IMG/VR virus record: IMGVR_UViG_3300021197_001489
Location: 252,013-316,012 of that record
Direction: 5' to 3' (one strand)
DNA: 64,000 nucleotides
Under the pieces are notes generated by a model. That model did not search any database. It was not told the DNA's origin and saw nothing but the letters and a program-made list of their open reading frames with translations. Each line of letters starts with the position of its first letter. Positions within the stretch are counted from its first letter, which is position 1. Below, piece by piece: positions 1,962-41,775 of the stretch. Both the position numbers and the translations under genes were made by a program.

Positions 1962-1968
1962 ATACATT

Positions 1969-5423: not shown

Positions 5424-5436
5424 ATAAAGAAAAAGG

Positions 5437-5470
5437 TTGACCTTTCTGTTTAATCTGTTATAATGTATAT
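5437..5470 (+). promoter_or_regulatory. Sigma70-like early promoter, ACAGTTAG family
   Basis: TTGACC-N16-TATAAT with TG extension, followed by GTATATAACAGTTAG. Confidence 0.8.
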
Positions 5471-5481
5471 AACAGTTAGGA

Positions 5482-5694
5482 ATGAGTCATATGATGCCAG
5501 TACATTTTATAGGTGTAGCACAAGATCAGTTTGTTAGCGCAGTTCGCGTATTTGGCGAGCCTGATTTTGTACACAAATGGCATGATTATCGCAGTCATGG
5601 AGACATAGACTGGGACAGTGATACAGTTGTTCTAGGCGACAAAGGTCGCACAACCCCTTGCAAATGGAGCTGGCAAGATCATGAACTATACTAA
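5482..5694 (+). CDS. Small hypothetical protein
   Basis: 70-aa ORF directly after the early promoter. Confidence 0.75.
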   Translation: MSHMMPVHFIGVAQDQFVSAVRVFGEPDFVHKWHDYRSHGDIDWDSDTVVLGDKGRTTPCKWSWQDHELY

Positions 5695-8008
5695 AATTAC
5701 ACTTGGACTAATGGCATGTACAGCACTGAGTGCTTGTGGCGGCGGCTCAGGTGGCGGTGGGCCAGTAGTTGGTGGCCCACCTAGTAGTCAATATTATACA
5801 ACACCTGTAGCGCAAGGCACAGTTGATCCGTTGGCAGGTGCTGCTGAAAATGCAGCATTTGTTGGCGACACATTTATCACTGATTTAGATGGTGATGGAG
5901 CTACTGACGACATTGTAATGGCAGGCAGACAAACACAGCCTGTATCAGCAGCAAATATTCGTGATAGCAGACTGAGCGTACACTCGTTTGAGAATGGACA
6001 ATTGGTTGATAAAACTGCACAGTGGTTTTCAGGAACTGACAATGTAATAATGGGCACAGAGCCTGACGTGCAATTTAGAGATTTCTTTAAGACAGGCAAA
6101 CAGGATATGTTTGTATCGCACAGCACTGATATGCAACACTACGGTCCAGCTACATTTTTCCGCAACAATGGCAGCAACTTTACAAAAGTATCAATCCCTA
6201 CAGTAGGTATTTGGTCACATGGCAGTGATGTTGGCGATCTCAACAACGACAGCTATGATGACATTATCATGCTGGACTATGGACCAAACTCAACTATTGC
6301 ACTGAACAATACTGTAGATGGATTTACAACATATGTTGATCCACGTGGTCGTAACGGCCATTTTAAAAGTGGAGGATCAGGTGTTGCCATTGGTAATTTT
6401 ATGAATGATGGCGGCAACAATGAAATTATTGTAAGTGACGGTGCGTGTCCATTGCAGTATCTCAATGTTGTTGGATGCGACAATGCAAATAGAACCAAAA
6501 TGTTCAGTGTGGATTTTACTGGCGGTACGTTAACATACACATTTATTAAAGATCTACCATCAGGCGCAAATGCAGCAAACGTCGATCACCATGTGAGAGT
6601 TGTTAATCATGATTACAACGAAGATGGCAATGCTGATGTGATTGTGTTCTCTCGGACAAGTAGCTCTTGGAGTACAGAACTTAGCGAGATACAGTTTTTG
6701 CAAAATGACGGTAGCGGTAACTTCACTGACACTACAGCAGATACACTGATTGGATATAAAACTGATACAGCTAGTACTTACAAGCCAAAATTCTTTGATA
6801 TCAATGGCGATGGAAAAACTGATATACTGGTAAGTGGTACAGAGTTCGAAGGTAATGGTGGCGGATATAACAGTCATCAGTTTTTGCTAAAAACAGCCGA
6901 TAACAAATATATTGCTGCTCATCAAAATATTCTAAAAAACTTTATGAACGATGTTGAAAGCATTGCAACGGGCAACGTCAGTGGCTCAAGTGTTAACATC
7001 TTTCAAGGTGATGATGGTAACCAGTATCTTGTAACATGGGCTAGCACGTCTAGTGTGAGTAGTGACACAAAACTTACACTGTTTATGAGTCGTCTTGATG
7101 ATAGTGCAACCACTATCAGTGCTGGAACTGCGGTAACTATGTTGCAAAATGCTTGGCCGTACCTAAGTGATGCACAAGCAACACAGGCACTGCTCGATAC
7201 TAGCACAAGTTTTGCTGGTGGCAATATCATTGATATGAACCGTGCGTATCAGCCAATTGGTAACTTGGCAATGGGAGGCTTGGACTTAACTGGCTCAATC
7301 ACAGGCTTTGATATTGGCAACATTACAGGAATGGCAACTGACAGCCTTGGACGCGGTTACGGTATAGATCTTGCCCAGGCAAACATTGTGAACACAGGCA
7401 CTGCTATGTACAACAGTATTGACACAGTGCGCAACGCCTACACTGACGGCGAAGTACACTTTGGTGCAGACAGCGACACACAGCAATGGACAGTGGGCAA
7501 CAGCTATTATAAAAATGGTAACGTAGATGTTAGCATGCACATGACACAGTTGAACAGCAACCCTTGGATTGGTTTTAGCGGTGTATGGGGCGATGTTAAA
7601 AACGCCAGCATCATTGACAATGTTGTTACCTACAAGCAGGACAATGTCACACTAAAAGGCAGTGTAATGCATGTGAGTACAAACTTTACGCCAGGACTGA
7701 TCACAGATGTATCCAAGCAAACAGGTGCATGGGCTGAAGCCAGTTACAGTGACGGCGGGTTCCGTGCAGATGTTGGTGTACATCCTGTTATGTTGTCAGG
7801 GTCGGTAACGGCAAACGTTCCAACCAGCATTGACAATACAGGGACAACACACTATACAAACTACAAGTTTGCTTTGCCTAGTAACATTAATGGTTACATT
7901 CGCAGCCAATACAGCACTCCACTTAAACTAGGCAAGTTGAATGTAGCAGCCGCAGTTAGTCAAACAGGGCAGCAAACTACTAGTGTTGAATATTTCTTTA
8001 AATGGTAA
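5681..8008 (+). CDS. Lipoprotein with FG-GAP/VCBS-like repeats and probable C-terminal beta-barrel
   Basis: Lipobox-like ALSA-C followed by GGGSGGGG; repeated DLDGDG, DLNNDSYDD, DYNEDGNADV, DINGDGKTDI motifs; amphipathic C-terminal strands ending in EYFFKW. Confidence 0.75.
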   Translation: MNYTKITLGLMACTALSACGGGSGGGGPVVGGPPSSQYYTTPVAQGTVDPLAGAAENAAFVGDTFITDLDGDGATDDIVMAGRQTQPVSAANIRDSRLSVHSFENGQLVDKTAQWFSGTDNVIMGTEPDVQFRDFFKTGKQDMFVSHSTDMQHYGPATFFRNNGSNFTKVSIPTVGIWSHGSDVGDLNNDSYDDIIMLDYGPNSTIALNNTVDGFTTYVDPRGRNGHFKSGGSGVAIGNFMNDGGNNEIIVSDGACPLQYLNVVGCDNANRTKMFSVDFTGGTLTYTFIKDLPSGANAANVDHHVRVVNHDYNEDGNADVIVFSRTSSSWSTELSEIQFLQNDGSGNFTDTTADTLIGYKTDTASTYKPKFFDINGDGKTDILVSGTEFEGNGGGYNSHQFLLKTADNKYIAAHQNILKNFMNDVESIATGNVSGSSVNIFQGDDGNQYLVTWASTSSVSSDTKLTLFMSRLDDSATTISAGTAVTMLQNAWPYLSDAQATQALLDTSTSFAGGNIIDMNRAYQPIGNLAMGGLDLTGSITGFDIGNITGMATDSLGRGYGIDLAQANIVNTGTAMYNSIDTVRNAYTDGEVHFGADSDTQQWTVGNSYYKNGNVDVSMHMTQLNSNPWIGFSGVWGDVKNASIIDNVVTYKQDNVTLKGSVMHVSTNFTPGLITDVSKQTGAWAEASYSDGGFRADVGVHPVMLSGSVTANVPTSIDNTGTTHYTNYKFALPSNINGYIRSQYSTPLKLGKLNVAAAVSQTGQQTTSVEYFFKW

Positions 8009-13551: not shown

Positions 13552-15190
13552 CGCCCAGCAATATACCAGTAATAACCTATTACAAAATAATGGCATGGGT
13601 TACAATCACAACTATTTGAGGGCCGAAAACTGGTCAGGTACTTACGGTATAGGCTATTGGGGCGGAAGCACTGCTTCAGGTGGTAACAATCCAAGTATTC
13701 CAAACAGGATGCCAAACAATTCAGGTTTTAATTGGGGAGGTGCAGACAGTACTATTAGTGCAACCATTGCACTTAACACTGCATTACAATTAAGTGGTAT
13801 ACAAGTAGAAGGATTTGAATATGAATGGCGTGTTAAAAACTATAACACAACGTCAAGAACACAAACACAAGTCGATCCCTTTGAAATAACAGTAGATGTT
13901 AAAAAAGCAGATGGATCAATCTTTACATCCTATAATTATCAATATGGTCGAACTGGCTGGCAAGTTTTTTCTGGATCAGAATCATTTGGTGTGCCTCACT
14001 TGCCTGTGTCTTTCTTTGGCGATGTTGTAATATCAGCACAAGCCCAAGATATTGAAAACTATGCAGGACATTACGGTCCTGAATTCAACGTTAGCGCAAG
14101 TTCATTTAAAATGACCTATAGTCTTGATCCTTGTTACAGTAATCCTCTACATTCGGCTACATGCCCTGGTTATGCAACTGCATTTTACAATCAACAATGC
14201 ACTGCTAATCCATTGTACGATTCAGGTTGTACGGGCTATGCTGCCGCTTATTTGACGCAACAATGTACCAGTAATCCGTTGTACAGCACCAGTTGTACAG
14301 GATACACAACAGCATATTACAATCAACAGTGTGCTTTAGATGCACTCTATGATAAAGGTTGCAAAGGATATCAGGCCGCATACACAACACAACAATGTTC
14401 GTTAGATCCATCATACGATCCAAGCTGTACAGGATACGCAACTGCAATTGGAAATCAACAGTGTATTGCAGATCCTACATCAGATCCAAGTTGTCCGGAC
14501 TACTATGTAGAAATGTGTAAAGCAGATGCACTATATGACCAAGGTTGTTCAGGATATTCTACTGCTTACTTTGATCAACAGTGCAGTTTAGATGGACAAT
14601 ATGATCAGAGCTGTCCAGGATATATAGATCTTTCCGGTAATGATGGCGATGTTGCAGTGCTTGATCCTGTTGTTGATGATGTAGTAAATGTAGAAGTGCC
14701 AGTGTTTGTTGTTCCGGAACCAGTTGTTGTGGTTGAGGACACAGCGGTAGAAGAAGAAACAGTAGTAGAAGTTGAGATTGTGGAAGTTGTGATTGACGAT
14801 ACACCACAGGAAATAGTCAGTGACCAAGCCGACTTGATCGAAGAAGAAGTTGTAATGATTGAAAGCGTAAAGAAAATTGATAAAGTTGAAGCAAAAGCAA
14901 AAAAGATAAAAGAAATACGTCAGGAGATTATCGAATCACTTGCAGATAAGATGAGTACTGCGGCCTCGTTTGGAATACAAACTAAAATACAAAGTAGAAT
15001 AATAAAGGTACTAAATTTTGTACAGGATTTTGATGGGTACGGAAACAATGTTATACCTGATGGTCAATTTGAAGAAGAAGTAAATCTCAAGGGCGGCAGG
15101 AATGTGGATCATCAGTTTGCAAGATGGTTTTTAAACGATCCGAACTATGAACGTTTAGAAGCAATGCAATATGAGTTAAAAGGTTACTAA
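13478..15190 (+). CDS. Exported protein with eight cysteine-rich 22-aa repeats
   Basis: Signal peptide, beta-rich N-domain, C-x9-C-x-GY repeats, Val/Glu-rich linker, helical C-terminus. Confidence 0.85.
   Translation: MFKKETVLSLLAALVLVCCFSSYSNAQQYTSNNLLQNNGMGYNHNYLRAENWSGTYGIGYWGGSTASGGNNPSIPNRMPNNSGFNWGGADSTISATIALNTALQLSGIQVEGFEYEWRVKNYNTTSRTQTQVDPFEITVDVKKADGSIFTSYNYQYGRTGWQVFSGSESFGVPHLPVSFFGDVVISAQAQDIENYAGHYGPEFNVSASSFKMTYSLDPCYSNPLHSATCPGYATAFYNQQCTANPLYDSGCTGYAAAYLTQQCTSNPLYSTSCTGYTTAYYNQQCALDALYDKGCKGYQAAYTTQQCSLDPSYDPSCTGYATAIGNQQCIADPTSDPSCPDYYVEMCKADALYDQGCSGYSTAYFDQQCSLDGQYDQSCPGYIDLSGNDGDVAVLDPVVDDVVNVEVPVFVVPEPVVVVEDTAVEEETVVEVEIVEVVIDDTPQEIVSDQADLIEEEVVMIESVKKIDKVEAKAKKIKEIRQEIIESLADKMSTAASFGIQTKIQSRIIKVLNFVQDFDGYGNNVIPDGQFEEEVNLKGGRNVDHQFARWFLNDPNYERLEAMQYELKGY
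14132..14623 (+). repeat. Degenerate 66-nt (22-aa) tandem repeat, 8 units, 16 Cys
   Basis: Units CYSNPLHSATCPGYATAFYNQQ, CTANPLYDSGCTGYAAAYLTQQ ... CSLDGQYDQSCPGY; one unit shortened to 18 aa and the last truncated. Confidence 0.95.
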
Positions 15191-15191
15191 A

Positions 15192-15350
15192 ATGTTCTAT
15201 GTTATAATAATTACAGTTGGAATTCTTTCATACAACTTTGACAATCTATATTTCAAAGACATAGAAACTTGTCGTTATCATAAGGCAAAGTTGGAACAGT
15301 CATTGCTGTTTTATAAGAGAGATACCAAAGTCGAATGTAAACTCAAATGA
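15192..15350 (+). CDS. Small signal-anchored two-cysteine protein (52 aa, not in ORF track)
   Basis: MFYVIIITVGILSYNFDNLYFKDIETCRYHK...KVECKLK*; fills the gap between neighbours exactly. Confidence 0.7.
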   Translation: MFYVIIITVGILSYNFDNLYFKDIETCRYHKAKLEQSLLFYKRDTKVECKLK

Positions 15351-15541
15351 TTGTGTTGGTGATCATATGCTTGTTGGTAGTTTTGCTTGCAACTCTGATA
15401 GGAGGTGTTTATATCTATGAGGATATAGACTGGTACACAGAACCACCGAGAACAGAGATAGAAATTAAAGCACAAGATATTAAAGCAAGAATAGCATGGA
15501 TAAAATTGGATATGGCGGCATTTTTACAAAATACTAGCTAA
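15347..15541 (+). CDS. Small membrane protein
   Basis: ATGA overlap; N-terminal TM helix. Confidence 0.7.
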   Translation: MIVLVIICLLVVLLATLIGGVYIYEDIDWYTEPPRTEIEIKAQDIKARIAWIKLDMAAFLQNTS

Positions 15542-15548
15542 TAAATAG

Positions 15549-16142
15549 ATGATGGAACCATCACAAGAATACTACGACGCAGTTGCCAAAGGCACACACT
15601 TTCAAGAAACTGAAAGTGCTTGGGCAGGTGCTGACAGTAAAAACTATATTGAACAAGTTAAATGCCTTGCAAAGCATCATAAAGCAAAAACACTGCTCGA
15701 CTACGGTTGCGGCAAAGGTGAACAGTACACACTTAAAGCTCCGCCTTTTGACGAGCGTACTGGTTTTAAAAGCTACTACCTATTTGATCCATGTGTGCAA
15801 CGCTACAGCAAACCGCCTCGCAGTAACAGAAAATTTGACGCAATTATCTGTTTACAAGTTATAAGACACATACCCAATAAAGATATTCAATGGCTTAAAG
15901 AGTACTTTGAACGTGCTGCCAAGAAGTTTGTGCTTATTGGCGAGTATGATCCTACCTTTAAACAAAAGCCAAAAAAAGTAACCAATGCTGATTCAGAAAG
16001 TAGAACAATTGACTTTTACCAAGAAGCGTTTGCAGACTGGAACAGTTCAGCAGAACTGTACTTTCATTGGCGAAAACACCAATGTGAAGTGACCAGAAGA
16101 GACAACAATAAGATTATAAATATCACTAACATGGAGAGCTAG
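15549..16142 (+). CDS. Class I SAM-dependent methyltransferase
   Basis: LLDYGCGKG motif I, YYLFDP, FDAIICLQVIRHIP. Confidence 0.85.
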   Translation: MMEPSQEYYDAVAKGTHFQETESAWAGADSKNYIEQVKCLAKHHKAKTLLDYGCGKGEQYTLKAPPFDERTGFKSYYLFDPCVQRYSKPPRSNRKFDAIICLQVIRHIPNKDIQWLKEYFERAAKKFVLIGEYDPTFKQKPKKVTNADSESRTIDFYQEAFADWNSSAELYFHWRKHQCEVTRRDNNKIINITNMES

Positions 16143-16143
16143 A

Positions 16144-16476
16144 ATGGGCGAAGAAGAAATTAAACAAGCAGGGTTTCACCCAGCAGACACCAACGGTGAT
16201 GGAAACGTTACCAATGATGAACATGAAATGTACATGGAATTCAAACGTAAAGAACTTGAAGATCAAGATGCAATGCGCGATGCACAGCGTAAGATGGCAT
16301 GGTTTAGTTTAGCAGGTATGCTCCTATATCCAGCTATTGTGCTAATTGCGGTGCTAGCCGGCATTGACCAAGCAGCAAAAATACTAGGCGATATGGCAGC
16401 CGTTTACTTTGTTTCAGTAGCAGCTATTGTTGCAGCATTCTTTGGTGCGCAAGCATATAACAAACCTAAGAAATAG
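16144..16476 (+). CDS. EF-hand-containing two-TM membrane protein
   Basis: Canonical 12-residue loop DTNGDGNVTNDE, two hydrophobic helices, basic C-terminus (NKPKK). Confidence 0.75.
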   Translation: MGEEEIKQAGFHPADTNGDGNVTNDEHEMYMEFKRKELEDQDAMRDAQRKMAWFSLAGMLLYPAIVLIAVLAGIDQAAKILGDMAAVYFVSVAAIVAAFFGAQAYNKPKK

Positions 16477-17030
16477 TGTACCCCCATCCATACTACTGCT
16501 GGCCAGACTATCCTGGCGTTGAAAACTTTTACTTTGTAAACATTCCAAAAAATTGCAGTACCACAGTGCGCAACTGGGCAGCATGGATTGGAACACGTAA
16601 TGGCAAACTAACCAAGCCTTTTCGTTTTACCATTCTGCGTGATCCGTATGGTAGACTCAAGAGTACATTTGCATATGGACTGAGTCAGCGATACAGTTAC
16701 TTGGAAACGGTTGAAAGCATTGGCAACAAACTGTTAGGAGCCAGCGAGCTTTCTGGAGACTTGCTGACACATTTTATACCGCAGCATGTGTTTCTTGAAC
16801 ATGCGCCAGTTAAACCAGAACATTATTATCACAGTGGGCAGATGCGTGAATTGCGTCAAGAACTAAGCAACCGCAGCGGAATCGATCTTATATGGATACA
16901 TGAGAATCGCAGCAGGTACAGTGCTGAGTTCACTGAGCAGTACAACAACTGGTTTGTAAAAAATCAAACCTGGATCGATGATTACCTTGGCCGAGATGTC
17001 GAATTATATGCTCAACACATTGTCTCTTAG
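16476..17030 (+). CDS. Sulfotransferase family protein (Sulfotransfer_2-like)
   Basis: FVNIPKNCSTT (5'-PSB-like), FTILRDPYGRLKS (3'-PB-like), HFIPQ. Confidence 0.75.
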   Translation: MYPHPYYCWPDYPGVENFYFVNIPKNCSTTVRNWAAWIGTRNGKLTKPFRFTILRDPYGRLKSTFAYGLSQRYSYLETVESIGNKLLGASELSGDLLTHFIPQHVFLEHAPVKPEHYYHSGQMRELRQELSNRSGIDLIWIHENRSRYSAEFTEQYNNWFVKNQTWIDDYLGRDVELYAQHIVS

Positions 17031-18062
17031 CTCTTGGGTTATTGAATCAAAAAATTCATCACTAAAAAACAGCGTTTTGTTTTTGCTGGCTATAGTTTTA
17101 CAGCTATTCCAAATTGATTCCTGTTGATTATCAGGTAAGTTATTGATACGATCCATCTCTTTTATGACCATGAGCATGCGCTTGTCGCAGTCTGATTCTG
17201 TATCATAACTTTCGTCAATAAAGGGTGAGAATGTTTCGAATCCGTAACTGCGCAAATATTTCAGTGTTCCAGCACCATTCAGTATCATAAAAGGATGCCC
17301 GCATGCAATTGGGCGTAGTGTTTTTTCTGTAAGGTGGATGCGACCATCGTATACAGTTTCTAACACAATGCTGCAATTTGTTTTTGCAAAGTCTTCGCAG
17401 TTATATTCAGCACTGCTATTGCTGTTAACAACGGCGTCAGGATCAATACTGCCCAGTTGCTTTCTGTCAACAAACCTAAGCAGTTTTAAAAAATGTTGTC
17501 GGTATTGTCTTGTGCCAGTTGTGCCTCTGGCATACACTAACCAATTAGCCTCTTTGTCTTCTTGCGGTAGTTCAAGACGTTGGTCATACTGAGCATATCT
17601 ATACCAGTCTCGAGCAATTGCTGCATGACTCCACCAATAAGCACATGCAAATAGTCCACTGTCTTCATAGCGTTCTACTTGAGGGCTAGCCAGTTCACTG
17701 TGTAATAATATCCATTTTTCTGTGAAGTTTTGTGGGTGCTGCCATCTTAGATTTAGGTTCTCATAGTTAGATTTTTTAATATCATCGATTTGTGTTGGAA
17801 TAAAGTTACCACTAGCTACAAGTGCGTTGAGGATCTTTTGATCATCACTGTACATGTCAAAATCCAATGGCTCTTGATCGTGACAAATTAGCACAGGAAA
17901 AGCAGCGTATTTTTTACGATATATATCTTCGTTCATTCGATCTACATTGCTTACTAGATTGGCAATATCTTTTTGTCCCCAGGGATAGAAGTATTTGATT
18001 AAAAATTTATTTTCTACCACCTGGGCGACAAAATTGTATAAATTACTAGTAGGAACAGACAT
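17004..18062 (-). CDS. Glycosyltransferase-like protein
   Basis: C-terminal IVLET...LTEKTLRPI..GHPF...G.L.YLRSYGFETF...DESYD block resembling GT10-type TEK motifs; start placed at MSVPTS. Confidence 0.55.
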   Translation of the reverse strand: MSVPTSNLYNFVAQVVENKFLIKYFYPWGQKDIANLVSNVDRMNEDIYRKKYAAFPVLICHDQEPLDFDMYSDDQKILNALVASGNFIPTQIDDIKKSNYENLNLRWQHPQNFTEKWILLHSELASPQVERYEDSGLFACAYWWSHAAIARDWYRYAQYDQRLELPQEDKEANWLVYARGTTGTRQYRQHFLKLLRFVDRKQLGSIDPDAVVNSNSSAEYNCEDFAKTNCSIVLETVYDGRIHLTEKTLRPIACGHPFMILNGAGTLKYLRSYGFETFSPFIDESYDTESDCDKRMLMVIKEMDRINNLPDNQQESIWNSCKTIASKNKTLFFSDEFFDSITQELRDNVLSI

Positions 18063-18078
18063 CTTAGAAAGGTACCTT

Positions 18079-19314
18079 ATGAGAATTGGATTTATTGGGC
18101 TTGGCAAGCTCGGACTTGATTGCGCCGAAGTAATGGCAGAAAAGTATACAGTACATGGCTACGATATTTACCCGCGTACTTCGGACAGTGTAAAAGTTTG
18201 TAGCACTCCCAAAAAGATGATTGACAACAGTGATTGGATTTTTATTGCTGTTCAAACGCCACACACAGAAGGTTATGATGGTAGTGTTCCTAGCTCGCAC
18301 ATGGAACCCAAAGACTTTGGACATGATGCTGTTAAAGATGCTATTAACATGGTAAACGAACTGGCTATCGAACCAAAAAAGATTGTGCTTATTTCAACAG
18401 TGCTTCCTGGAACTACACGACGTGAGTTTTATCCCTTGCTAAACAGTGAGCATCAATTTTTATACAATCCATACTTGATTGCAATGGGCAGTGTAAAGTG
18501 GGACTTTGCTAACCCTGAAATGGTTATGATAGGTACCGAAACAGGTGATCCTACAGAGATGGAAGATCTAATCAATCTGTATCGCCCACTGATGAAAAAC
18601 AATCCACGTTATGTTACAGGTACCTGGGACGAATGCGAAAGTATAAAGATATTTTACAACACATTTATCAGTGCTAAAGTAGGGCTTGTAAACATGATAC
18701 AAGACTTTGCACTAAAGATAGGCAACATAAACGTTGACGTTGTTACAGACGCTCTAGCACAGAGTACAATGCGTATTATGGGTCCGAAGTACATGACAGC
18801 AGGCATGGGAGACTCAGGCGCATGCCATCCACGAGATAACATTGCACTGCGTTGGCTTGCAAAAGAATACGATATCGGTTACGATATGTTTGATACTATT
18901 ATGGGTGCTAGAGAAGTACAAGCAAAGAATCTAGCAGACTTTTTGGTAGAACACGCCGACGGCAAGCCTATTGTGATACACGGGAAAGCATACAAACCTG
19001 ATGTGCCTTTTTGTATCGGAAGTTATAGCACACTGATTGGTTTCTACATTGAAGAGCAAGGATTGCCGGTAAAGTATGTAGATCCAATTGCAGACAATCC
19101 AAAAGACGTAGTTGATAGCATTGACGAAGCATCAATGATATTGTATGCACACAATAGATATATCACATACGGTTATACTGGACAGTATACCAAGGATGAT
19201 ACTTTCTACTGTGACATTCCACCAGGTTCTGTTGTTGTTGATCCATGGAGAAACCTGCCTAAACACAGTAACAGTTACGAAGTAATACATTATGGCAACA
19301 CCAGACCACAATAA
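18079..19314 (+). CDS. UDP-glucose/GDP-mannose dehydrogenase family protein (divergent)
   Basis: GFIGLGKLG Rossmann motif, IAVQTP, STVLPGTT, ESIKIFYNTF, catalytic Cys in GACHPRD, GKAYKPD. Confidence 0.9.
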   Translation: MRIGFIGLGKLGLDCAEVMAEKYTVHGYDIYPRTSDSVKVCSTPKKMIDNSDWIFIAVQTPHTEGYDGSVPSSHMEPKDFGHDAVKDAINMVNELAIEPKKIVLISTVLPGTTRREFYPLLNSEHQFLYNPYLIAMGSVKWDFANPEMVMIGTETGDPTEMEDLINLYRPLMKNNPRYVTGTWDECESIKIFYNTFISAKVGLVNMIQDFALKIGNINVDVVTDALAQSTMRIMGPKYMTAGMGDSGACHPRDNIALRWLAKEYDIGYDMFDTIMGAREVQAKNLADFLVEHADGKPIVIHGKAYKPDVPFCIGSYSTLIGFYIEEQGLPVKYVDPIADNPKDVVDSIDEASMILYAHNRYITYGYTGQYTKDDTFYCDIPPGSVVVDPWRNLPKHSNSYEVIHYGNTRPQ

Positions 19315-19816
19315 AACATGGTGGCAAGGACACAGTGCTCCAGTATGGCAAGGAGCATTTGAAGACCTGCCATACAAAAACGAACCGTTCAATGATCCTG
19401 TAAGTTTAGCAGAATGGCGCAAGCTAGGGTACACACAAACAAAGTTCACCGGCGATATGTATGACATGCGCAATTCTGCACCCGGATGGATGAATGCAAT
19501 TCGCAAAGTATTGCCTTGGAAACATTTTTCATGGAGTGTTTACAGAATGGATCCAGGGTGTTGCTTGCCAACACACGGCGATACATATGCACGTTTCTGT
19601 AAGTTATACAACATCACAGACATGTACACAGTTCACAGAGCAATATTTTTTATGAAAGATTGGGAAAGCGGACACGTCTTTGAAATAGATGGTGTACCGC
19701 AAACACAATGGCGTGCCGGAGACTACTATGTGTGGCGAAATGATACTGAGCATCTAGCAGCCAACGTTGGCAAAACACCTAGATACAGTCTACAGATTAC
19801 TGGAGTTATCGAGTGA
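19292..19816 (+). CDS. 2OG-Fe(II)/cupin-fold oxygenase-like protein
   Basis: LPTHGD (HxD) ... HLAAN and PRYSLQITG. Confidence 0.7.
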   Translation: MATPDHNKTWWQGHSAPVWQGAFEDLPYKNEPFNDPVSLAEWRKLGYTQTKFTGDMYDMRNSAPGWMNAIRKVLPWKHFSWSVYRMDPGCCLPTHGDTYARFCKLYNITDMYTVHRAIFFMKDWESGHVFEIDGVPQTQWRAGDYYVWRNDTEHLAANVGKTPRYSLQITGVIE

Positions 19817-20733
19817 AAATCCACAGTTACAATGAATGGGATCAACTTAGGGAAACCTATGTTGGCATAGCCAACCATGCCAATTGGCCAAGTGATGATC
19901 CAGTGTTCGCCAACGAAAGTGAAAAAACACTGTGGAAAGAAACGCCAGTACCAAGTGGTGCTGTGCCGCAGTGGATCATTGACGAAGCCAATGAAGACCT
20001 AGACAGTTTAGCAGCAATATTAGTTAAGCAAGGTGTTAAAGTCAATCGCCCAACTGATATAAACTTCCAAATGATGGGCGGCATGTACAACTACTGCCCA
20101 CGTGATAGACTATTAATTGCCGGTGACAGAATACTTGATCCGCCAATGATGTATCCGTGTAGAAACATGGAAGTGCTTTGTTACAAAGAAATGACTGAAG
20201 GCAATACAGTTATTGAAATGCCGCGTGATCAAGGCTTAACGCTGGATGCAGCAAACATCTGCAGACTTGGAGATACTTGGTTATATCTTGAAAGCGAAAG
20301 TGGCAATAGAGCAGCATACGAATGGCTGTGCGAAAAGTTTCCAAGTATTAACATCGAACTGGTAAACTTTTATGCAGGAGTACACATTGACAGTACCATT
20401 GTGCCACTGCGTGAAGGATTGCTGCTTGCAAACAGGCCTCGTGTAAAATCAAAACGTTACTTGCCAAAAGTTCTCAAAGATTGGAAAATCATCTATGTTG
20501 ATGACATGGTGCCGCAAAGTTTTCATGAATATCCATATGCCAGTAAATGGATTGGATTGAACATGTTGGCTGTGAATAGCAACACCGTAATAATGGACCC
20601 GGCCCAGACTGACCTTATAAATACTCTGGAGAAGCATAAGTTTAACATTATAACGCACACACTGCGACACAGCAGAACACTGGGCGGCGGACATCACTGT
20701 GTAACACTAGATACCTGGAGAGAAAATGCTTGA
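19813..20733 (+). CDS. Amidinotransferase (glycine/inosamine-phosphate amidinotransferase family)
   Basis: SYNEWDQL, CPRD, DAANI, HIDST, C-terminal TLGGGHHCVTLD with catalytic Cys. Confidence 0.9.
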   Translation: MKIHSYNEWDQLRETYVGIANHANWPSDDPVFANESEKTLWKETPVPSGAVPQWIIDEANEDLDSLAAILVKQGVKVNRPTDINFQMMGGMYNYCPRDRLLIAGDRILDPPMMYPCRNMEVLCYKEMTEGNTVIEMPRDQGLTLDAANICRLGDTWLYLESESGNRAAYEWLCEKFPSINIELVNFYAGVHIDSTIVPLREGLLLANRPRVKSKRYLPKVLKDWKIIYVDDMVPQSFHEYPYASKWIGLNMLAVNSNTVIMDPAQTDLINTLEKHKFNIITHTLRHSRTLGGGHHCVTLDTWRENA

Positions 20734-21976
20734 CGCTAATATATTAAATCAACTTGTCCAAGATGAAATTAAGAAAAATGTCAATGAACAAATAAACACT
20801 GCACTTAGCTCTTCAGAATGGTTACAAGATCTTGAGTCACGAATCGTTGCGCATGTACAGGATCGAATCACTGCTCGTTTTGCCAACATCAGTACTATTC
20901 CAGACCTTGTAAGCACAGTAAGTTCAAGTGTTGAAAAAATGTTCAAAGATGGGCTTGTGCCTAGCCTTGATAACTTGGTGGATAACACACTGCTTGAACA
21001 GGCAGTTGATCAAGCAGTTGAAAATCTAGTAAGAGACACTGTTGAAAATTTAATGTTCAATGAATCATGGATGGTAAAGATTCAAACGCAAATCTCTCGC
21101 GAAATGAGTGATCGTATTTCAAAGACACTCAAACAAGTGAATATCAAAGATGTACTACGTGAAGTAGTAATTGAAAATGCAGGAACACTCACAGCAGATC
21201 TCAACAGAGAACTCACTGTTGAAGATGGATTAGTTATTGTCAAGCGTCATCTTAATGCTGAAAGTGCTAGCTTTGAAGAAGGTATTGTGGTTAAAGGTCC
21301 TGCAAGTTTTACAAAAAGTGTAACAGTAGATGGTGATCTTGCTATCAAAGGACGTATCAATACCAACAACAGAAGTTTTATCGAACTTGCTGAAGTTATT
21401 GAAACAAATGCTTACAACAAACTCAAAGAAGAGTTTCTTGAACTTGCAAGCGATTCAATTATTGATCGAGTTCAAAAAGGTATCGATGTCAAGGCAATAA
21501 ACATTCTTGGTAAACCATTGGTTGACGATGGAGAACTTAGCAGTGGTATTGTTAACAGTAATCTTACCACTGTTGGTACATTAAGTAGTTTACAGGTTGG
21601 TACTTATTTAAGTGCTAATAATCATAGAGTAGGTATCAATACCACCACACCAACCAGTGCGCTAAGTGTTTGGGACAACGAAGTCAGCATTGAAATAGGC
21701 AAACACAGTCAAAATTCAGCACAAATTGGCACAGCAAAAGCACACAGTCTTAGTTTACTAACTAATAATCAACAACAATTAACCATTAACGCAGATGGGC
21801 TAACTTGGGTAAAAGAACTACAGGTTGGGCGTAACAAGATTGCAACAGCTGGTTTAACCCCAGGGCATTCTGGAGCAAAAGGTGATATTGTATTCAATAG
21901 CAACTACAAACAAGGCGAGCCATTTGCCTGGGCATGCTTGGGTGCATATCGCTGGGCGGAGCTAAAGTCAGCCTAA
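20726..21976 (+). CDS. Hypothetical protein, possibly virion fibre-like
   Basis: Helical N-half; beta-rich C-half with RVGINTTTP motif and GDIVFNS...W.C end. Confidence 0.7.
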   Translation: MLDANILNQLVQDEIKKNVNEQINTALSSSEWLQDLESRIVAHVQDRITARFANISTIPDLVSTVSSSVEKMFKDGLVPSLDNLVDNTLLEQAVDQAVENLVRDTVENLMFNESWMVKIQTQISREMSDRISKTLKQVNIKDVLREVVIENAGTLTADLNRELTVEDGLVIVKRHLNAESASFEEGIVVKGPASFTKSVTVDGDLAIKGRINTNNRSFIELAEVIETNAYNKLKEEFLELASDSIIDRVQKGIDVKAINILGKPLVDDGELSSGIVNSNLTTVGTLSSLQVGTYLSANNHRVGINTTTPTSALSVWDNEVSIEIGKHSQNSAQIGTAKAHSLSLLTNNQQQLTINADGLTWVKELQVGRNKIATAGLTPGHSGAKGDIVFNSNYKQGEPFAWACLGAYRWAELKSA

Positions 21977-22524
21977 TGGAAGTTTCTTGGGTACTAAGTG
22001 CTGATTACAGTGATCCAATTGTAAAGCCAGAAACACTCAAAGAGATTGGGTCAACTTGGGGTAGCTGGAAAACCTGGCGCGGGTACAGCACCGACAATGT
22101 GTTGTGTTTCGATGACACAAAGGCACAGGATCTAATTAAACGTGCGTTTCACAGTGTGTGTAACTTTTACATTCCTGAAAAAAGCTACATAACACTTAAC
22201 CGTCCAAGTGGTGTCAAAGTGTTTGATGGTGATTTTCCGGCTGAATTTGAAAATCAAGAAGACGTTATTGCTATGCATCTAGTAAGCCAAAGCGAGTTGG
22301 TACTGCTGTTGGGCTTTGATCTACAAGAAATCACCGATACCGATACTGTTTCAAAACATCTAAAGAAAAACTACGAAGCCGCAGTTCGTGCTGTGATCAA
22401 AAACCACCCTAATACACAGTGGGTATTTGTTGATCATCCTGGCGAAATGGATAAAAGTTTTGAAGAAATAGAAAATATCACTTGCGATACCTATGAAAAT
22501 GTGTTACAATTACTAGGTAACTAA
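21976..22524 (+). CDS. Hypothetical protein
   Basis: TAATG coupling with the upstream gene; 182 aa. Confidence 0.75.
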   Translation: MEVSWVLSADYSDPIVKPETLKEIGSTWGSWKTWRGYSTDNVLCFDDTKAQDLIKRAFHSVCNFYIPEKSYITLNRPSGVKVFDGDFPAEFENQEDVIAMHLVSQSELVLLLGFDLQEITDTDTVSKHLKKNYEAAVRAVIKNHPNTQWVFVDHPGEMDKSFEEIENITCDTYENVLQLLGN

Positions 22525-22542
22525 GACACCTAGGAGAATTAC

Positions 22543-23565
22543 ATGGCTGCTCGCGTAGGCTTTTGCTGCAAGTATCTGCATCCAGATCAGACACAAAAGA
22601 AAAAAGTCCTAATGGAGATCCAGCAACAGCGTACAGAAAAATGTACCACTGTTGCGTGGCTTAAACGGCAGACTCGTGAAGTTGCTGAACAGCGTTTGTA
22701 TGACATCATGCAACACAACATGCAAAGCGCGGCCAACTTGGTTGAGTATGTAGGACGCCTTGAGCCAGGATTGCGAATGGTGCGACTGGGCAGCAATCAA
22801 TTGCCCATGTACACACAGCCAGACTTCAGTTACTTTTGGCAACAACCTGATATCAAAGTTGAATTGGCAAAAGGTTACGCACAAGTAGGCAAACTTGCAC
22901 GACAGTGGGATGTGCGCCTAAGTTTTCACCCTGGACAGTTTTGCGTATTAGCCAGTGACAGTGAAGATATCGTAAATAGAAGCATAGAGGAGTTTGAATA
23001 TCATGTTGACATGGTCAGATGGATGGGCTTCGGCCGTAAATTCCAAGACTTCAAGTGTAATGTCCACATCAGCGGTCGCCAGGGTCCAGCCGGTATCCAA
23101 CGAGTCCTCCCAAGACTATCTCCAGAAGCGCGAAACTGCATTACTATTGAGAATGACGAGATGTCGCACGGTCTCGACGCATCGCTTGAGCTCAGCAAAG
23201 ACGTCGCCCTCGTTCTTGATATACACCACCACTGGGTCCGTACCGGTGAATACATCGAGGCCACCGACGATAGAGTTCTTCGCGTAATTGATAGCTGGCG
23301 CGGTATACGCCCAGCATTGCATTACTCAGTATCACGTGAAGACATACTGGTTGATCACGATCCTAATGTGCGTCCAGATATGGAAAGTTTACTCGCAGCA
23401 GGCTTCAAGAAACAAAAACTTAGAGCGCACAGTGACTTCTACTGGAATCATGCAGTCAACGAATGGGCTGCAACATTTGCCAAAGATTTTGACATACAAT
23501 GTGAGAGCAAGTGCAAGAATCTTGCCAGTCATGCATTCCACAATAACTATATTAAAGGAGACTAA
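22543..23565 (+). CDS. uvsE: UV damage endonuclease
   Basis: RVGFCC, VRLGS, RLSFHPGQF, NVHISG, ITIENDE, LVLDIHHHW, HYSVS, AHSDF, ESKCKNLA. Confidence 0.93.
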   Translation: MAARVGFCCKYLHPDQTQKKKVLMEIQQQRTEKCTTVAWLKRQTREVAEQRLYDIMQHNMQSAANLVEYVGRLEPGLRMVRLGSNQLPMYTQPDFSYFWQQPDIKVELAKGYAQVGKLARQWDVRLSFHPGQFCVLASDSEDIVNRSIEEFEYHVDMVRWMGFGRKFQDFKCNVHISGRQGPAGIQRVLPRLSPEARNCITIENDEMSHGLDASLELSKDVALVLDIHHHWVRTGEYIEATDDRVLRVIDSWRGIRPALHYSVSREDILVDHDPNVRPDMESLLAAGFKKQKLRAHSDFYWNHAVNEWAATFAKDFDIQCESKCKNLASHAFHNNYIKGD

Positions 23566-23566
23566 A

Positions 23567-23758
23567 ATGCGTCAATCAACTGAACATGTGTTTCACAACA
23601 AGTTTACCAGAATTTCAGACCTCATGCATCGCTATCGTGCAGAAGGTGTAAAAGACGGAGGCAGACCAGCAGCAGAGTACCGTGGTGCTCGCAGGAATAC
23701 AGCACGGTTAAGTTATAGAATTGCCAAAAAAGCTGTTAAAGCTGAATATCAAGAATAA
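23567..23758 (+). CDS. Small basic hypothetical protein
   Basis: AAGGAG RBS, ATG at 23567, 63 aa. Confidence 0.7.
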   Translation: MRQSTEHVFHNKFTRISDLMHRYRAEGVKDGGRPAAEYRGARRNTARLSYRIAKKAVKAEYQE

Positions 23759-23960
23759 ACTGATCACTGGGTTTTGTGTTATCATATTCGATGCACTTCA
23801 CCCGCATTAGGCCGTTGCTTAAACCTTTCCACGAACCATCTGTGGTTAGATTAGCGGCGGCTTTTTCACATTTTTGCAACGTATTAAATGTCAAAAACTC
23901 TGGATGCGGTATCCAAACTCCTGGTGCTGCCAATACAAACACCACTAGTGCGTACATCAC
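23736..23960 (-). CDS. Small signal-anchored two-cysteine protein
   Basis: MYALVVFVLAA, FNTLQKC, RVKC. Confidence 0.65.
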   Translation of the reverse strand: MMYALVVFVLAAPGVWIPHPEFLTFNTLQKCEKAAANLTTDGSWKGLSNGLMRVKCIEYDNTKPSDQFILDIQL

Positions 23961-23963
23961 GTG

Positions 23964-24449
23964 TTAGATATTATCTTTGTTTGCAACAATACTTCCGTTG
24001 CCAAACAAATCAACTGCTTTCCAGCTTAGATAAATCTTGTATCCAGGAACCTTTGGATCAGCATCTCGCATTCCTTCTAAGAAAACTTTGTCTGACGCAA
24101 CTTTTGCAGTCTTTACTAGATCGCTATCTTGGGCATCGCCTTTATTCCAACGGTACTGCCTTATAGTTTTGTATAGTAGGTCGTGTATTATAGCTGCTCT
24201 AGCAACGTCAAATGGTGCAATTAACCACCACATCATCCTTGGCACACTTGCTAAGTCAGTAACGAATCCTGATGGCACTGTAATAGTTTCAGTTTTGTTG
24301 TTTTCTCTTTTAACTTTGACACCTACACCCTTGAGTGCATCAATTTCATCTACTGTAAGTGCAGATGTTGTATAAGATAGATCTCTGCCAAGTGTCCACT
24401 TTCTAGGTGGATTAAACTCAGCCATAATTTTATTATTAAATTGTCCCAT
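23964..24449 (-). CDS. DUF1353-like protein
   Basis: ITVPSGFVTDLASVP, AAIIHDLLY, DKVFLEGM. Confidence 0.85.
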   Translation of the reverse strand: MGQFNNKIMAEFNPPRKWTLGRDLSYTTSALTVDEIDALKGVGVKVKRENNKTETITVPSGFVTDLASVPRMMWWLIAPFDVARAAIIHDLLYKTIRQYRWNKGDAQDSDLVKTAKVASDKVFLEGMRDADPKVPGYKIYLSWKAVDLFGNGSIVANKDNI

Positions 24450-41713: not shown

Positions 41714-41734
41714 TCTACTTTAGACTGCATTTGG

Positions 41735-41763
41735 GAAAGCCACCTTCGGGTGGCTTTCTTTTT
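41735..41763 (+). terminator. Rho-independent terminator with UUCG loop
   Basis: GAAAGCCACC-TTCG-GGTGGCTTTC-TTTTT. Confidence 0.93.
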
Positions 41764-41775
41764 ATAAGTAGTAGT

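What the first reader, a model, noticed from the sequence alone, without database searches (positions are those of the whole stretch)
15549..20733. Sugar-tailoring island ending in an amidinotransferase
Seen: SAM methyltransferase, sulfotransferase, GT-like protein, nucleotide-sugar dehydrogenase, HxD...H oxygenase and an amidinotransferase with intact Cys-His-Asp, the last three overlapping in one operon. The dehydrogenase has NPYLIAMG and GACHPRD in place of NPEFLREG and GGSCFPKD, suggesting another substrate. Known: StrB1-type enzymes amidinate aminocyclitols using arginine. Inference: a route to an amidinated, methylated or sulfated glycan for virion, host surface or DNA modification; I do not recognise this combination as a described phage pathway.
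Basis: partly seen in the sequence, partly recalled or inferred. Interest (0 to 1): 0.7.

Follow-up and report, generated by a model that had tools for sequence, protein, structure and literature searches.

The report
Phage sugar-tailoring module with amidinotransferase
A marine jumbo phage carries a conserved gene block that joins a streptomycin-type amidinotransferase to a glycosyltransferase, a sugar-dehydrogenase-like enzyme and an oxygenase. It most likely decorates a sugar chain with an arginine-derived amidino group, a modification not yet described for phages and not shown here by chemistry.

Summary
In detail: all six enzyme calls were verified. The 306-aa protein is a full-length StrB1 homologue (E 1.8e-56, about 42% identity) with the Cys-His-Asp residues invariant in relatives.

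The island's boundaries are wrong. In 31 related loci the conserved unit is a GT-B glycosyltransferase (minus strand), then dehydrogenase, 2OG oxygenase, amidinotransferase, a fibre-like protein, a 182-aa protein and UvdE. The methyltransferase, the 110-aa membrane protein and the sulfotransferase are strain-specific additions.

A glycan role is supported only by comparative evidence:
- Amidinotransferases sit among glycosyltransferases in three unrelated phage groups.
- This genome holds three amidinotransferase paralogues.
- One paralogue follows two paralogues of the same glycosyltransferase, near a sugar 4,6-dehydratase-like enzyme, a sugar aminotransferase and a carbamoyltransferase.
- Another paralogue of that glycosyltransferase lies beside the major capsid gene.

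DNA modification is disfavoured, because no hydroxymethylase, TGT or QueC was found.

The acceptor, the product and the target (virion protein or host envelope) remain inferred. The enzymes are new members of known families in an undescribed but abundant marine phage module. Interest is moderate to high.

The parts
15549..16142 (+). SAM-dependent methyltransferase (197 aa). A strain-specific accessory gene, not part of the conserved module.
   Evidence: Pfam Methyltransf_23 E 3.6e-9 and PHROG 24759 E 1.4e-14. No homologue in any of the related loci.
16144..16476 (+). 110-aa protein with an EF-hand-like loop (DTNGDGNVTNDE) and a hydrophobic C-terminal half. Accessory.
   Evidence: Sequence. Pfam EF-hand_5 only E 0.1. 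Absent from related loci.
16476..17030 (+). Short (184 aa) Sulfotransfer_2-like protein. Accessory, shared only with the closest relative, L006.
   Evidence: Direct Pfam hit only E 0.081. 11 of 19 homologues hit PF03567, best 1.6e-16. K25, S28, R55, P57, R60 and S63 are conserved. Best PDB profile hits are heparan sulfate 2-O-sulfotransferases. Synteny.
17004..18062 (-). GT-B fold glycosyltransferase (352 aa from M16), GT10 (fucosyltransferase)-like. Transcribed divergently from the dehydrogenase with 16 bp between the start codons. The most constant partner of the amidinotransferase.
   Evidence: AlphaFold model pLDDT 89.2. VIA Z 10.9 to T4 beta-glucosyltransferase and 10.3 to H. pylori alpha1,3-fucosyltransferase; all 50 top matches are GT-B enzymes. 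Atlas lead to Glyco_transf_10, and the fold also occurs fused to sugar epimerase/dehydratase domains. Present in 26 of 28 assessable loci. At least three paralogues in the genome.
18079..19314 (+). UDP-glucose/GDP-mannose-dehydrogenase-family enzyme (411 aa from M29) of a phage-specific subfamily. It keeps the catalytic Cys, Lys, Asn and Asp but has lost both Glu of NPEFLREG.
   Evidence: Pfam PF00984 E 1.2e-14 and PF03721 E 2e-12. PHROG 9148 E 9e-83. Below the NCBIfam cut-off, 128.6 against 189.8. Alignment to UGDH 4a7p. NPYLIA(M/Q)G and GxCHPRDN are invariant in 12 members, including Bellamy and HTVC008M.
19292..19816 (+). Small (174 aa) Fe(II)/2-oxoglutarate-dependent oxygenase of no named family.
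   Evidence: Model pLDDT 88.7. Foldseek matches to P4H, AusE/FtmOx1-type, Asp/Asn-hydroxylase and PhyH folds. H95, D97, H154 and R164 invariant. Immediately upstream of the amidinotransferase in 28 of 31 loci, and also in cyanophage S-SCSM2R.
19813..20733 (+). StrB1-type (pentein-fold) amidinotransferase, 306 aa. About 40 residues shorter than StrB1 through two loop deletions.
   Evidence: PDB 1bwd E 1.8e-56, full length, about 42% identity counted from the printed alignment. Weaker two-segment matches to HsvA, SxtG and AGAT. Catalytic residues invariant. 6616 metagenomic homologues.
20726..21976 (+). 416-aa protein of a viral-only family, possibly a fibre-like virion protein. Start overlaps the amidinotransferase stop by 8 bp. 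A candidate acceptor, by inference only.
   Evidence: No Pfam, PHROG or phage-isolate match. Atlas feature leads to phage tail-fibre-like PTL_trimer (0.89) and T4 gp9/10. Present in about two thirds of loci.
21976..22524 (+). 182-aa protein (ORF from 21934). Weak leads to the MptE-like/DUF115 fold, so possibly a second transferase.
   Evidence: NCBIfam BFO_1060 glycosyltransferase E 7.4e-4, C-terminal part only. Atlas: MptE-like 0.89 with 172 shared features; a relative's model has TM 0.68 to a viral MptE-like cluster. Weak similarity (E 1e-4) to a 195-aa ORF near the capsid gene that itself has a weak MptE-like hit.
22543..23565 (+). UvdE UV-damage endonuclease. A constant downstream neighbour, with no evident functional link.
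   Evidence: Pfam UvdE E 1e-37 and PHROG 8420 E 1.6e-75. Synteny.

Best explanation
The conserved block 17004-22524 is a phage glycan-building and glycan-tailoring module.

**Proposed roles.**
- The StrB1-type enzyme takes the amidino group of L-arginine onto its active-site cysteine and passes it to a free amine on a sugar or sugar-like acceptor. This would turn the amine into a guanidino group.
- The UGDH-family enzyme and the small 2OG oxygenase prepare or further modify that sugar.
- The divergently transcribed GT10-like GT-B enzyme, perhaps with the 182-aa MptE-like protein, transfers it to the final acceptor.
- The most likely acceptor is a virion protein such as the co-transcribed fibre-like 416-aa protein. 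The alternative is a host envelope glycan.
- The amine is probably supplied by sugar aminotransferases encoded elsewhere in the genome.

**Shown.** Enzyme families, catalytic residues, gene linkage and recurrence.

**Inferred.** Arginine as donor (by homology), a sugar as acceptor (by context), the order of steps and the target.
For: 1. Full-length homology to StrB1 with all catalytic residues, invariant in relatives.

2. The block GT(-)|DH|OX|AT keeps its order in 31 loci from 4-350 kb contigs while the outer flanks differ.
   - The GT is present in 26 of 28 assessable loci.
   - The oxygenase is adjacent to the amidinotransferase in 28 of 31.
   - The dehydrogenase is present in 25 of 30.

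3. Amidinotransferases recur in glycan contexts outside this lineage.
   - Cyanophage S-SCSM2R has an OX+AT pair among five glycosyltransferases and a short DegT-like protein.
   - It has a second AT + 2OG oxygenase beside KdsA/KdsB and a GT.
   - In Campylobacter phage CP220 the AT sits with two GT-A genes and a PAP2 phosphatase.

4. The same genome has a second cluster:
   - a 4,6-dehydratase-like SDR;
   - a PseC/LegC/ArnB-like sugar aminotransferase;
   - a GFO/IDH/MocA oxidoreductase;
   - two paralogues of the GT, followed by an AT paralogue that keeps His, Asp and Cys;
   - a NodU-type carbamoyltransferase.

5. A further GT paralogue (hhalign probability 98%, E 7.7e-14) and a weakly p196-like, MptE-like ORF lie just after the major capsid gene.

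6. The same Glu-less dehydrogenase subfamily sits in sugar clusters of phages Bellamy and HTVC008M, with GTs, a carbamoyltransferase, a NadE-like enzyme and a methyltransferase.

7. The genes DH to p196 overlap or abut, so they read as one operon.

8. Marine metatranscriptome assemblies hold DH-OX-AT sequences of close relatives.
Against: - There is no chemical or proteomic evidence. Acceptor and product are unknown.
- No aminotransferase lies in the module itself. The short DegT-like gene is about 230 kb upstream on the linear record, or about 80 kb away if the ends join.
- The dehydrogenase is missing in 5 loci and the oxygenase in 2, so neither is obligatory for the amidinotransferase.
- Most of the 31 loci come from one phage lineage and several are near-duplicates, so part of the synteny may be inheritance rather than function.
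- The fibre-like identity of the 416-aa protein and the MptE-like identity of the 182-aa protein rest on leads below firm thresholds.
- N-amidino sugars in glycans have, to my knowledge, no precedent outside aminoglycoside-type metabolites.
- The metatranscriptome coverage follows sequence conservation, and DNA carry-over cannot be excluded.
- The OX-AT complex prediction gave no answer.
Confidence: 0.55

Rival explanations
1. Small-molecule metabolism. The amidinotransferase acts as an auxiliary metabolic gene on a free amine (glycine, lysine, ornithine, a polyamine or an aminocyclitol). It would make a guanidino metabolite, or shift arginine/ornithine pools, during infection. The oxygenase and dehydrogenase would process that metabolite, and the GT would be an unrelated neighbour.
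For: - All characterised relatives (StrB1, AGAT, HsvA, SxtG) act on small molecules.
- The other two paralogues resemble AGAT more than StrB1.
- A relative carries an AdoMet decarboxylase gene about 4 kb downstream.
- 2OG oxygenases often act on guanidino compounds (my own knowledge).
- The dehydrogenase and the oxygenase are each dispensable in some loci.
Against: - The link to a GT-B gene is near-constant: 26 of 28 loci.
- Amidinotransferases are embedded among glycosyltransferases in three unrelated phage groups and in the genome's own second cluster.
- No transporter, kinase or other small-molecule pathway gene is conserved beside it.
Confidence: 0.22
2. DNA hypermodification. The GT-B enzyme glycosylates a modified base in phage DNA, as the T4 glucosyltransferases do, and the other enzymes tailor the attached sugar to block host nucleases.
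For: - The best structural match of the GT is T4 beta-glucosyltransferase (Z 10.9), and T4 alpha-glucosyltransferase also matches (Z 8.8).
- The block is always next to the DNA-repair gene UvdE.
- Diverse DNA glycans made by viral GTs are reported (Pyle et al. 2024, as cited in PMC12619734).
Against: - No ThyA-family hydroxymethylase, TGT/DpdA or QueC in the 91%-complete genome.
- The fucosyltransferase match is nearly as good (Z 10.3), so the fold match does not discriminate.
- GT paralogues sit beside the capsid gene and beside sugar-nucleotide enzymes, not replication genes.
Confidence: 0.08
3. No pathway. The genes are independent accessory genes that stay together only because this phage lineage inherited them in that order.
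For: - Most loci belong to one lineage and several are duplicates.
- Relative L044 interleaves unrelated genes (FolE, NAD-dependent formate dehydrogenase) in the block.
- Promoter and terminator scans show nothing above chance.
Against: - Overlapping start and stop codons run from the dehydrogenase to the 182-aa gene.
- The block is kept while its flanks vary.
- AT+oxygenase and AT+GT pairings recur independently in distant phages and in paralogous form within this genome.
Confidence: 0.15

Closest known systems
StrB1, L-arginine:inosamine-phosphate amidinotransferase of Streptomyces griseus (PDB 1bwd)
   Same: Homologous over the whole length (E 1.8e-56, about 42% identity). Same catalytic Cys, His and Asp residues. 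Therefore presumably the same ping-pong chemistry with arginine as donor.
   Different: - About 40 residues shorter, through two loop deletions.
- No inositol dehydrogenase, inosamine kinase or aminocyclitol pathway beside it.
- Lies in a phage glycosyltransferase context, so the acceptor is probably different.
- No Pfam PF02274 hit.
2OG oxygenase + 'inosamine amidinotransferase' pair (ORF308-309) of Synechococcus phage S-SCSM2R
   Same: Same two genes, in the same order and overlapping, at 30% and 36% identity, set among glycosyltransferases.
   Different: - A T4-like cyanophage with no dehydrogenase or GT10-like gene adjacent.
- The publication interprets it as an 'antibiotic synthesis gene' without experiment (PMC12801897).
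- That paper detected the phage's other AT-like protein (ORF266) in virion preparations.
Sugar-tailoring clusters of marine T4-like phages Bellamy (genes 222-228) and HTVC008M (gp159-164)
   Same: They carry the same Glu-less dehydrogenase subfamily (46-55% identity, NPYLIA(M/Q)G invariant) together with glycosyltransferases and a methyltransferase.
   Different: They carry a carbamoyltransferase and a NadE-like enzyme instead of an amidinotransferase. The nitrogen-containing decoration would therefore be carbamoyl or amide rather than amidino.
Virion glycosylation in mycobacteriophages (Freeman et al. 2023, cited in PMC12619734)
   Same: Phage-encoded glycosyltransferases placed near structural genes modify capsid and tail proteins. 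Here a GT paralogue lies next to the major capsid gene and the module is co-transcribed with a fibre-like protein.
   Different: Unrelated GT families and hosts. No amidination is known there. Virion glycosylation is not shown here.
T4 alpha- and beta-glucosyltransferases (DNA glucosylation)
   Same: GT-B fold, and the best structural Z-score.
   Different: 6-7% identity. The genome lacks a hydroxymethylase to make the acceptor base.

Membership tests
Amidinotransferase family (StrB1/AGAT, pentein fold) | Full-length sequence homology to a solved member | tested here: met
   1bwd E 1.8e-56, residues 5-304 against 6-340. HsvA, SxtG and AGAT at E 1e-23 to 1e-30.
Amidinotransferase family (StrB1/AGAT, pentein fold) | Catalytic Cys-His-Asp plus the substrate-binding Asp residues | tested here: met
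   C296, H191, D98, D145 and D193 align to StrB1 C332, H227, D108, D179 and D229. Invariant in 20 relatives.
Amidinotransferase family (StrB1/AGAT, pentein fold) | Match to the Pfam model PF02274 | tested here: not met
   No Pfam family even at E 10. One 65%-identical homologue carries a precomputed PF02274 hit.
Amidinotransferase family (StrB1/AGAT, pentein fold) | Transfer of the amidino group from L-arginine to an amine | not testable with these tools
   Needs an enzyme assay.
Streptidine-type aminocyclitol pathway | Linked inositol dehydrogenase, StsC-type aminotransferase and inosamine kinase/phosphatase | tested here: not met
   None in the conserved block. A DegT-family aminotransferase and a GFO/IDH/MocA oxidoreductase exist only in a distant cluster.
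UDP-glucose/GDP-mannose 6-dehydrogenase family | NAD-binding and central domains, with catalytic Cys, Lys, Asn and Asp | tested here: met
   PF03721 and PF00984. The alignment to 4a7p shows C in GACHPRD, K and N in IKIFYN, and D in PRD. Invariant in the subfamily.
UDP-glucose/GDP-mannose 6-dehydrogenase family | The two Glu of NPEFLREG. By my recollection, the first is the base for thioester hydrolysis in human UGDH. | tested here: not met
   NPYLIAMG here; Tyr and Met/Gln are invariant in 12 members. The score is also below the NCBIfam subfamily cut-off, 128.6 against 189.8.
Fe(II)/2-oxoglutarate oxygenases | Double-stranded beta-helix fold with an HxD...H iron triad and a basic residue for the 2OG carboxylate | tested here: met
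   Model and Foldseek matches. H95, D97, H154 and R164 invariant. No named subfamily: Asp_Arg_Hydrox only E 0.005, below cut-off.
GT10 fucosyltransferase-like GT-B glycosyltransferases | GT-B fold | tested here: met
   Z 10.9-8.2 to 50 GT-B structures, including 2nzw/2nzy fucosyltransferase at Z 10.0-10.3.
GT10 fucosyltransferase-like GT-B glycosyltransferases | Match to Pfam PF00852, and the alpha1,3-fucosyltransferase E...TEK motif | tested here: inconclusive
   No Pfam hit at E 10. The Atlas lead to PF00852 scores only 0.81-0.82. An invariant E235-T236...H243-x-T245-E246-K247 resembles the motif as I recall it; this was not tested by alignment to a true GT10.
Sulfotransfer_2 (the 184-aa accessory gene) | Pfam match and PAPS-binding motifs | tested here: inconclusive
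   The protein itself scores E 0.081. 11 of 19 homologues match, best 1.6e-16. The motif residues are invariant.
Phage DNA glycosylation systems | An enzyme that makes the acceptor base (ThyA-type hydroxymethylase), or a deazaguanine insertion system | tested here: not met
   PF00303, PF01702 and PF06508 were not found in the 91%-complete genome, while the control genomes were found.

The most novel reading that the evidence does not exclude
Marine jumbo phages, and independently some cyanophages and Campylobacter phages, make guanidino (N-amidino) sugars. They would use arginine-dependent StrB1/AGAT-type amidinotransferases and attach the sugars to their own virion proteins through an expanded family of GT10-like transferases. 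This would be a new, positively charged glycan decoration affecting adsorption or evasion of host or grazer recognition.
Probability: 0.3. Interest if true: 0.8.

Novelty: new variant of a known kind. Interest (0 to 1): 0.6.

Why it matters
If the module works as proposed, it adds a new chemical group to the known ways in which phages decorate glycans: an arginine-derived amidino group, giving a permanently charged guanidino sugar.

It would also do so in a lineage that is abundant in the sea.
- The search found 6616 homologues of the enzyme.
- Near-identical DNA occurs in at least 17 marine or seawater metagenome runs from at least 10 studies.

It would give a function to 'glycine/inosamine amidinotransferase' genes that are now annotated as antibiotic or creatine genes in phage genomes and viral gene catalogues.

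It also points to a Glu-less branch of the UGDH family and a small 2OG oxygenase whose reactions are unknown.

Finally, it gives a concrete, testable case of possible virion glycosylation outside the mycobacteriophages.

Tried and rejected
- **Nucleotide similarity.** Megablast of 15000-24000 against phage isolates found no match.
- **Isolate homologues.** The GT and the 416-aa protein have no tblastn match in phage isolates.
- **PDB profile of the GT family.** No hit, so the fold had to come from a model.
- **OX-AT complex prediction.** 'No answer', score 0.00. It counts neither for nor against.
- **Promoter and terminator scans.** Counts equal to shuffles. The T4 late-promoter octamer TATAAATA gave 5 matches against 3.5 expected.
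- **Nonulosonic or Kdo-type sugar route.** This was prompted by the MptE-like lead for the 182-aa protein. No NeuB or CMP-transferase was found in the genome, so any such sugar would have to come from the host.
- **Deazaguanine (amidino-deazaguanine) idea.** This was prompted by the Campylobacter phage homologues and by a FolE gene in the genome.
  - No TGT or QueC was found here.
  - In CP220 the amidinotransferase sits with radical-SAM and GT-A genes, and nothing beside it is annotated as a queuosine-pathway gene.
- **Photosynthetic cyanophage.** The genome has no psbA. Its capsid is closest to Sinorhizobium, Vibrio and Pseudomonas jumbo phages.
- **Bacterial homologues.** The genome-collection scan returned mostly short MAG contigs carrying the same phage block, so no clear cellular context was gained.
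- **Literature.** Searches for amidinotransferase with phage, jumbo phage or scyllo-inosamine found no functional study.

Full report
**What the window is.** The window is the last 64 kb of a 316,012-bp single-contig virus record that is 91% complete.
- It encodes a T4-type major capsid protein. The nearest isolates are jumbo phages of Sinorhizobium, Vibrio, Pseudomonas (PA5oct), Xanthomonas and Erwinia, at 67-72% identity.
- It has no psbA.
- Near-identical DNA is present in at least 17 marine or seawater metagenome runs from at least 10 studies.
- It is therefore an uncultured marine jumbo myovirus of unknown host.

**Check of the observation.** The finding's coordinates run exactly from the start of the 197-aa ORF to the stop of the 306-aa ORF. 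Each call was tested.

- **Methyltransferase.** The 197-aa protein is a SAM methyltransferase: Methyltransf_23 E 3.6e-9 and a PHROG methyltransferase E 1.4e-14.

- **Sulfotransferase.** The 184-aa protein has only a faint direct Sulfotransfer_2 hit (E 0.081).
  - An exhaustive search found 22 relatives. 11 of 19 aligned members match Sulfotransfer_2, best 1.6e-16.
  - K25, S28, R55, P57, R60 and S63 are invariant or nearly so. I read these positions as the two PAPS-binding motifs.
  - The best PDB profile hits are heparan-sulfate sulfotransferases.
  - The call is right by transitive homology.

- **Glycosyltransferase.** The minus-strand protein (352 aa from M16) has no Pfam, PHROG, NCBIfam or PDB sequence match.
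  - A model at pLDDT 89 is a GT-B fold. The top 50 solved matches are all glycosyltransferases, led by T4 beta-glucosyltransferase (Z 10.9) and H. pylori alpha1,3-fucosyltransferase (Z 10.3).
  - The Atlas shows the same fold fused to sugar epimerase/dehydratase or methyltransferase domains in other phages, with a weak lead to GT10.

- **Dehydrogenase.** The dehydrogenase (411 aa from M29) has the N-terminal and central domains of the UDP-glucose/GDP-mannose dehydrogenase family.
  - It aligns to solved UGDHs with the catalytic Cys, Lys, Asn and Asp in place.
  - NPYLIAMG stands where they have NPEFLREG.

- **Oxygenase.** The 174-aa protein is a double-stranded beta-helix 2OG oxygenase with H95, D97, H154 and R164 invariant.

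- **Amidinotransferase.** The 306-aa protein matches StrB1 (1bwd) at E 1.8e-56 over its whole length, about 42% identity counted from the printed alignment.
  - D98, D145, H191, D193 and C296 lie at the StrB1 catalytic positions and are invariant in 20 relatives.

**The real extent of the unit.** I collected 31 loci that encode a 57-80% identical amidinotransferase: three by exact-protein look-up, 22 from IMG/VR and six from MAG contigs. Several are near-duplicates. I mapped the window's proteins onto them.

- The recurrent order is GT (minus strand), dehydrogenase, oxygenase, amidinotransferase, 416-aa protein, 182-aa protein, UvdE.
- The GT is present in 26 of 28 assessable loci.
- The oxygenase directly precedes the amidinotransferase in 28 of 31.
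- The dehydrogenase is present in 25 of 30.
- The 416-aa protein is present in about two thirds of loci, and the 182-aa protein in about half.
- The methyltransferase and the 110-aa protein are never found. The sulfotransferase occurs only in the closest relative.
- Genes outside the block differ between contigs: a CHASE2 cyclase, ClpS/HSP20 or a hydrolase upstream.
- GT and dehydrogenase start codons are 16 bp apart and divergent. From the dehydrogenase to the 182-aa gene every junction overlaps or abuts.
- The conserved unit is therefore 17004-22524. The three left-hand genes are strain-specific additions.

**Evidence that the amidinotransferase works on a glycan.**

1. The pairing recurs outside this lineage.
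   - Cyanophage S-SCSM2R has a homologous oxygenase + amidinotransferase pair among five glycosyltransferases, a radical-SAM protein and a short DegT-like protein.
   - The same phage has a second, AGAT-like amidinotransferase followed by a 2OG oxygenase, next to KdsA, KdsB and a GT.
   - In Campylobacter phage CP220 the amidinotransferase lies with radical-SAM proteins, two GT-A proteins and a PAP2 phosphatase.

2. This genome has three amidinotransferase paralogues.
   - One sits in a second sugar cluster with the following genes:
     - a 4,6-dehydratase-like SDR;
     - a PseC/LegC/ArnB-like sugar aminotransferase;
     - a GFO/IDH/MocA oxidoreductase;
     - two paralogues of the same GT, followed by the amidinotransferase paralogue;
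     - a NodU-type carbamoyltransferase.
   - That cluster supplies what the window's block lacks: an enzyme that puts a free amine on a sugar.

3. In relative L044 a short DegT-like gene lies between the oxygenase and the amidinotransferase. That contig also interleaves unrelated genes, so this point is weak.

4. The same Glu-less dehydrogenase subfamily sits in sugar clusters of phages Bellamy and HTVC008M. The motifs NPYLIA(M/Q)G and GxCHPRDN are invariant. Its neighbours there are GTs, a methyltransferase, a carbamoyltransferase and a NadE-like enzyme.

5. Relatives often carry one or two further AGAT-like copies just after UvdE.

**Target.**
- A further paralogue of the GT lies immediately after the major capsid gene (hhalign probability 98%, E 7.7e-14). 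Two genes on, there is an ORF weakly similar to the 182-aa protein, with a weak MptE-like hit.
- The 416-aa protein that is translationally coupled to the amidinotransferase has feature-level leads to tail-fibre-like proteins.
- The 182-aa protein has leads to the MptE-like fold, which by my recollection includes ulosonic-acid transferases.
- The S-SCSM2R paper detected that phage's AGAT-like protein and a 2OG oxygenase in purified virion preparations (PMC12801897).
- Together these make virion-protein glycosylation the most attractive target, but none of them is proof. A host envelope glycan is equally compatible with the enzymes.

**DNA as target.** The best fold match of the GT is a DNA glucosyltransferase, and UvdE is a constant neighbour.
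- However, the genome has no ThyA-type hydroxymethylase, TGT/DpdA or QueC, while the control genomes were detected.
- The fucosyltransferase match is nearly as good.
- I rate this rival low.

**Proposed mechanism.** Steps resting on homology or context are marked as inferred.
- Arginine amidinates C296 and ornithine leaves. The amidino group then passes to an amine on a sugar or nucleotide sugar (inferred from StrB1 homology and context).
- The two loop deletions relative to StrB1 may open the pocket for a bulkier acceptor (inference).
- The dehydrogenase oxidises a primary alcohol of a nucleotide sugar.
  - It lacks the Glu that, by my recollection, hydrolyses the thioester in human UGDH.
  - It may therefore stop at the aldehyde, which an aminotransferase could convert into the amine. 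Alternatively it may hand the acyl group to another nucleophile.
  - This is speculation that a stoichiometry assay can settle.
- The oxygenase hydroxylates the substrate at an unknown position.
- The GT10-like enzyme transfers the finished sugar.
- The dehydrogenase and the oxygenase are each absent in some loci, so they are tailoring steps rather than prerequisites.

**Expression.** Two marine metatranscriptome assemblies contain contigs 90-97% identical to the dehydrogenase, oxygenase and amidinotransferase. They contain almost none for the GT, the 416-aa gene or the 182-aa gene. This fits transcription in the sea. However, the pattern also follows sequence conservation, and DNA carry-over cannot be excluded.

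**Comparison with what is known, and novelty.**
- The enzymes are members or divergent members of known families. Phage sugar clusters and virion glycosylation are known in kind.
- No paper describing a phage amidinotransferase pathway was found. The only treatments are annotations as 'antibiotic synthesis' or amino-acid-metabolism genes.
- I class the block as a new variant of a known kind. It is a widespread, conserved phage glycan module whose distinctive step, amidination, has to my knowledge no described counterpart in phage or bacterial surface glycans.
- Confidence in the general reading is about 0.55. The specific product and target are open.

Noticed in passing
G000 genome 83449-84474 (L035:13450-14475) and 232028-233077 minus strand (L037:6029-7078): Two further amidinotransferase paralogues in the same phage, AGAT-like and keeping His, Asp and Cys. 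One lies in a sugar cluster, the other beside DnaB-like helicase and Pol III alpha genes. Relatives carry one or two such copies right after UvdE; L017 has two in tandem.
   Followed up: partly
G000 genome 144770-147260 (L047:4771-7260): Directly after the major capsid gene lie a 354-aa paralogue of the module's GT (hhalign probability 98%) and, two genes on, a 195-aa ORF with weak MptE-like and p196-like similarity. This hints at capsid glycosylation.
   Followed up: partly
window 16144-16476: A 110-aa protein with a canonical-looking EF-hand calcium loop (DTNGDGNVTNDE) followed by a hydrophobic, probably membrane-spanning C-terminal half. No family match above threshold.
   Followed up: no
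window 18062-18079: The GT and dehydrogenase genes are divergent with only 16 bp between start codons (3-30 bp in relatives). Their promoters must therefore lie inside each other's coding sequence, or the genes are read from distant promoters.
   Followed up: no
L044:9294-19812: A 61-kb contig binned as a Legionellales MAG is a relative of this phage (Bmp 78% and a 2OG oxygenase 84% identical). Next to the block it carries FolE, an NAD-dependent formate dehydrogenase (666 bits, above cut-off), a 1073-aa subtilase and a cytochrome b gene. It is either a mis-binned phage with unusual metabolic genes or a chimeric contig.
   Followed up: partly
G000 genome 32.6-38.2 kb (L036:4682-10184): A third sugar-related cluster: GT1-family GT, GalE (above the NCBIfam cut-off), a short (about 200 aa) DegT-like protein, GTP cyclohydrolase I, a PnrA/Bmp-type binding protein and a DIOX_N-type 2OG oxygenase. 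The short DegT-like protein is 41% identical to the 'AHBA synthase' of S-SCSM2R that lies near that phage's amidinotransferase.
   Followed up: partly
L016:6952-9477: In one relative the dehydrogenase ORF aligns only to residue 277 and is followed by about 1.4 kb before the oxygenase. This may be an insertion or a disrupted gene.
   Followed up: no
window 337-8008, 35688-37127, 41731-43662: The window also encodes an ATP-dependent DNA ligase, ClpX, an FG-GAP repeat protein, a TctA tricarboxylate-transporter subunit and a B12-binding radical-SAM protein.
   Followed up: no
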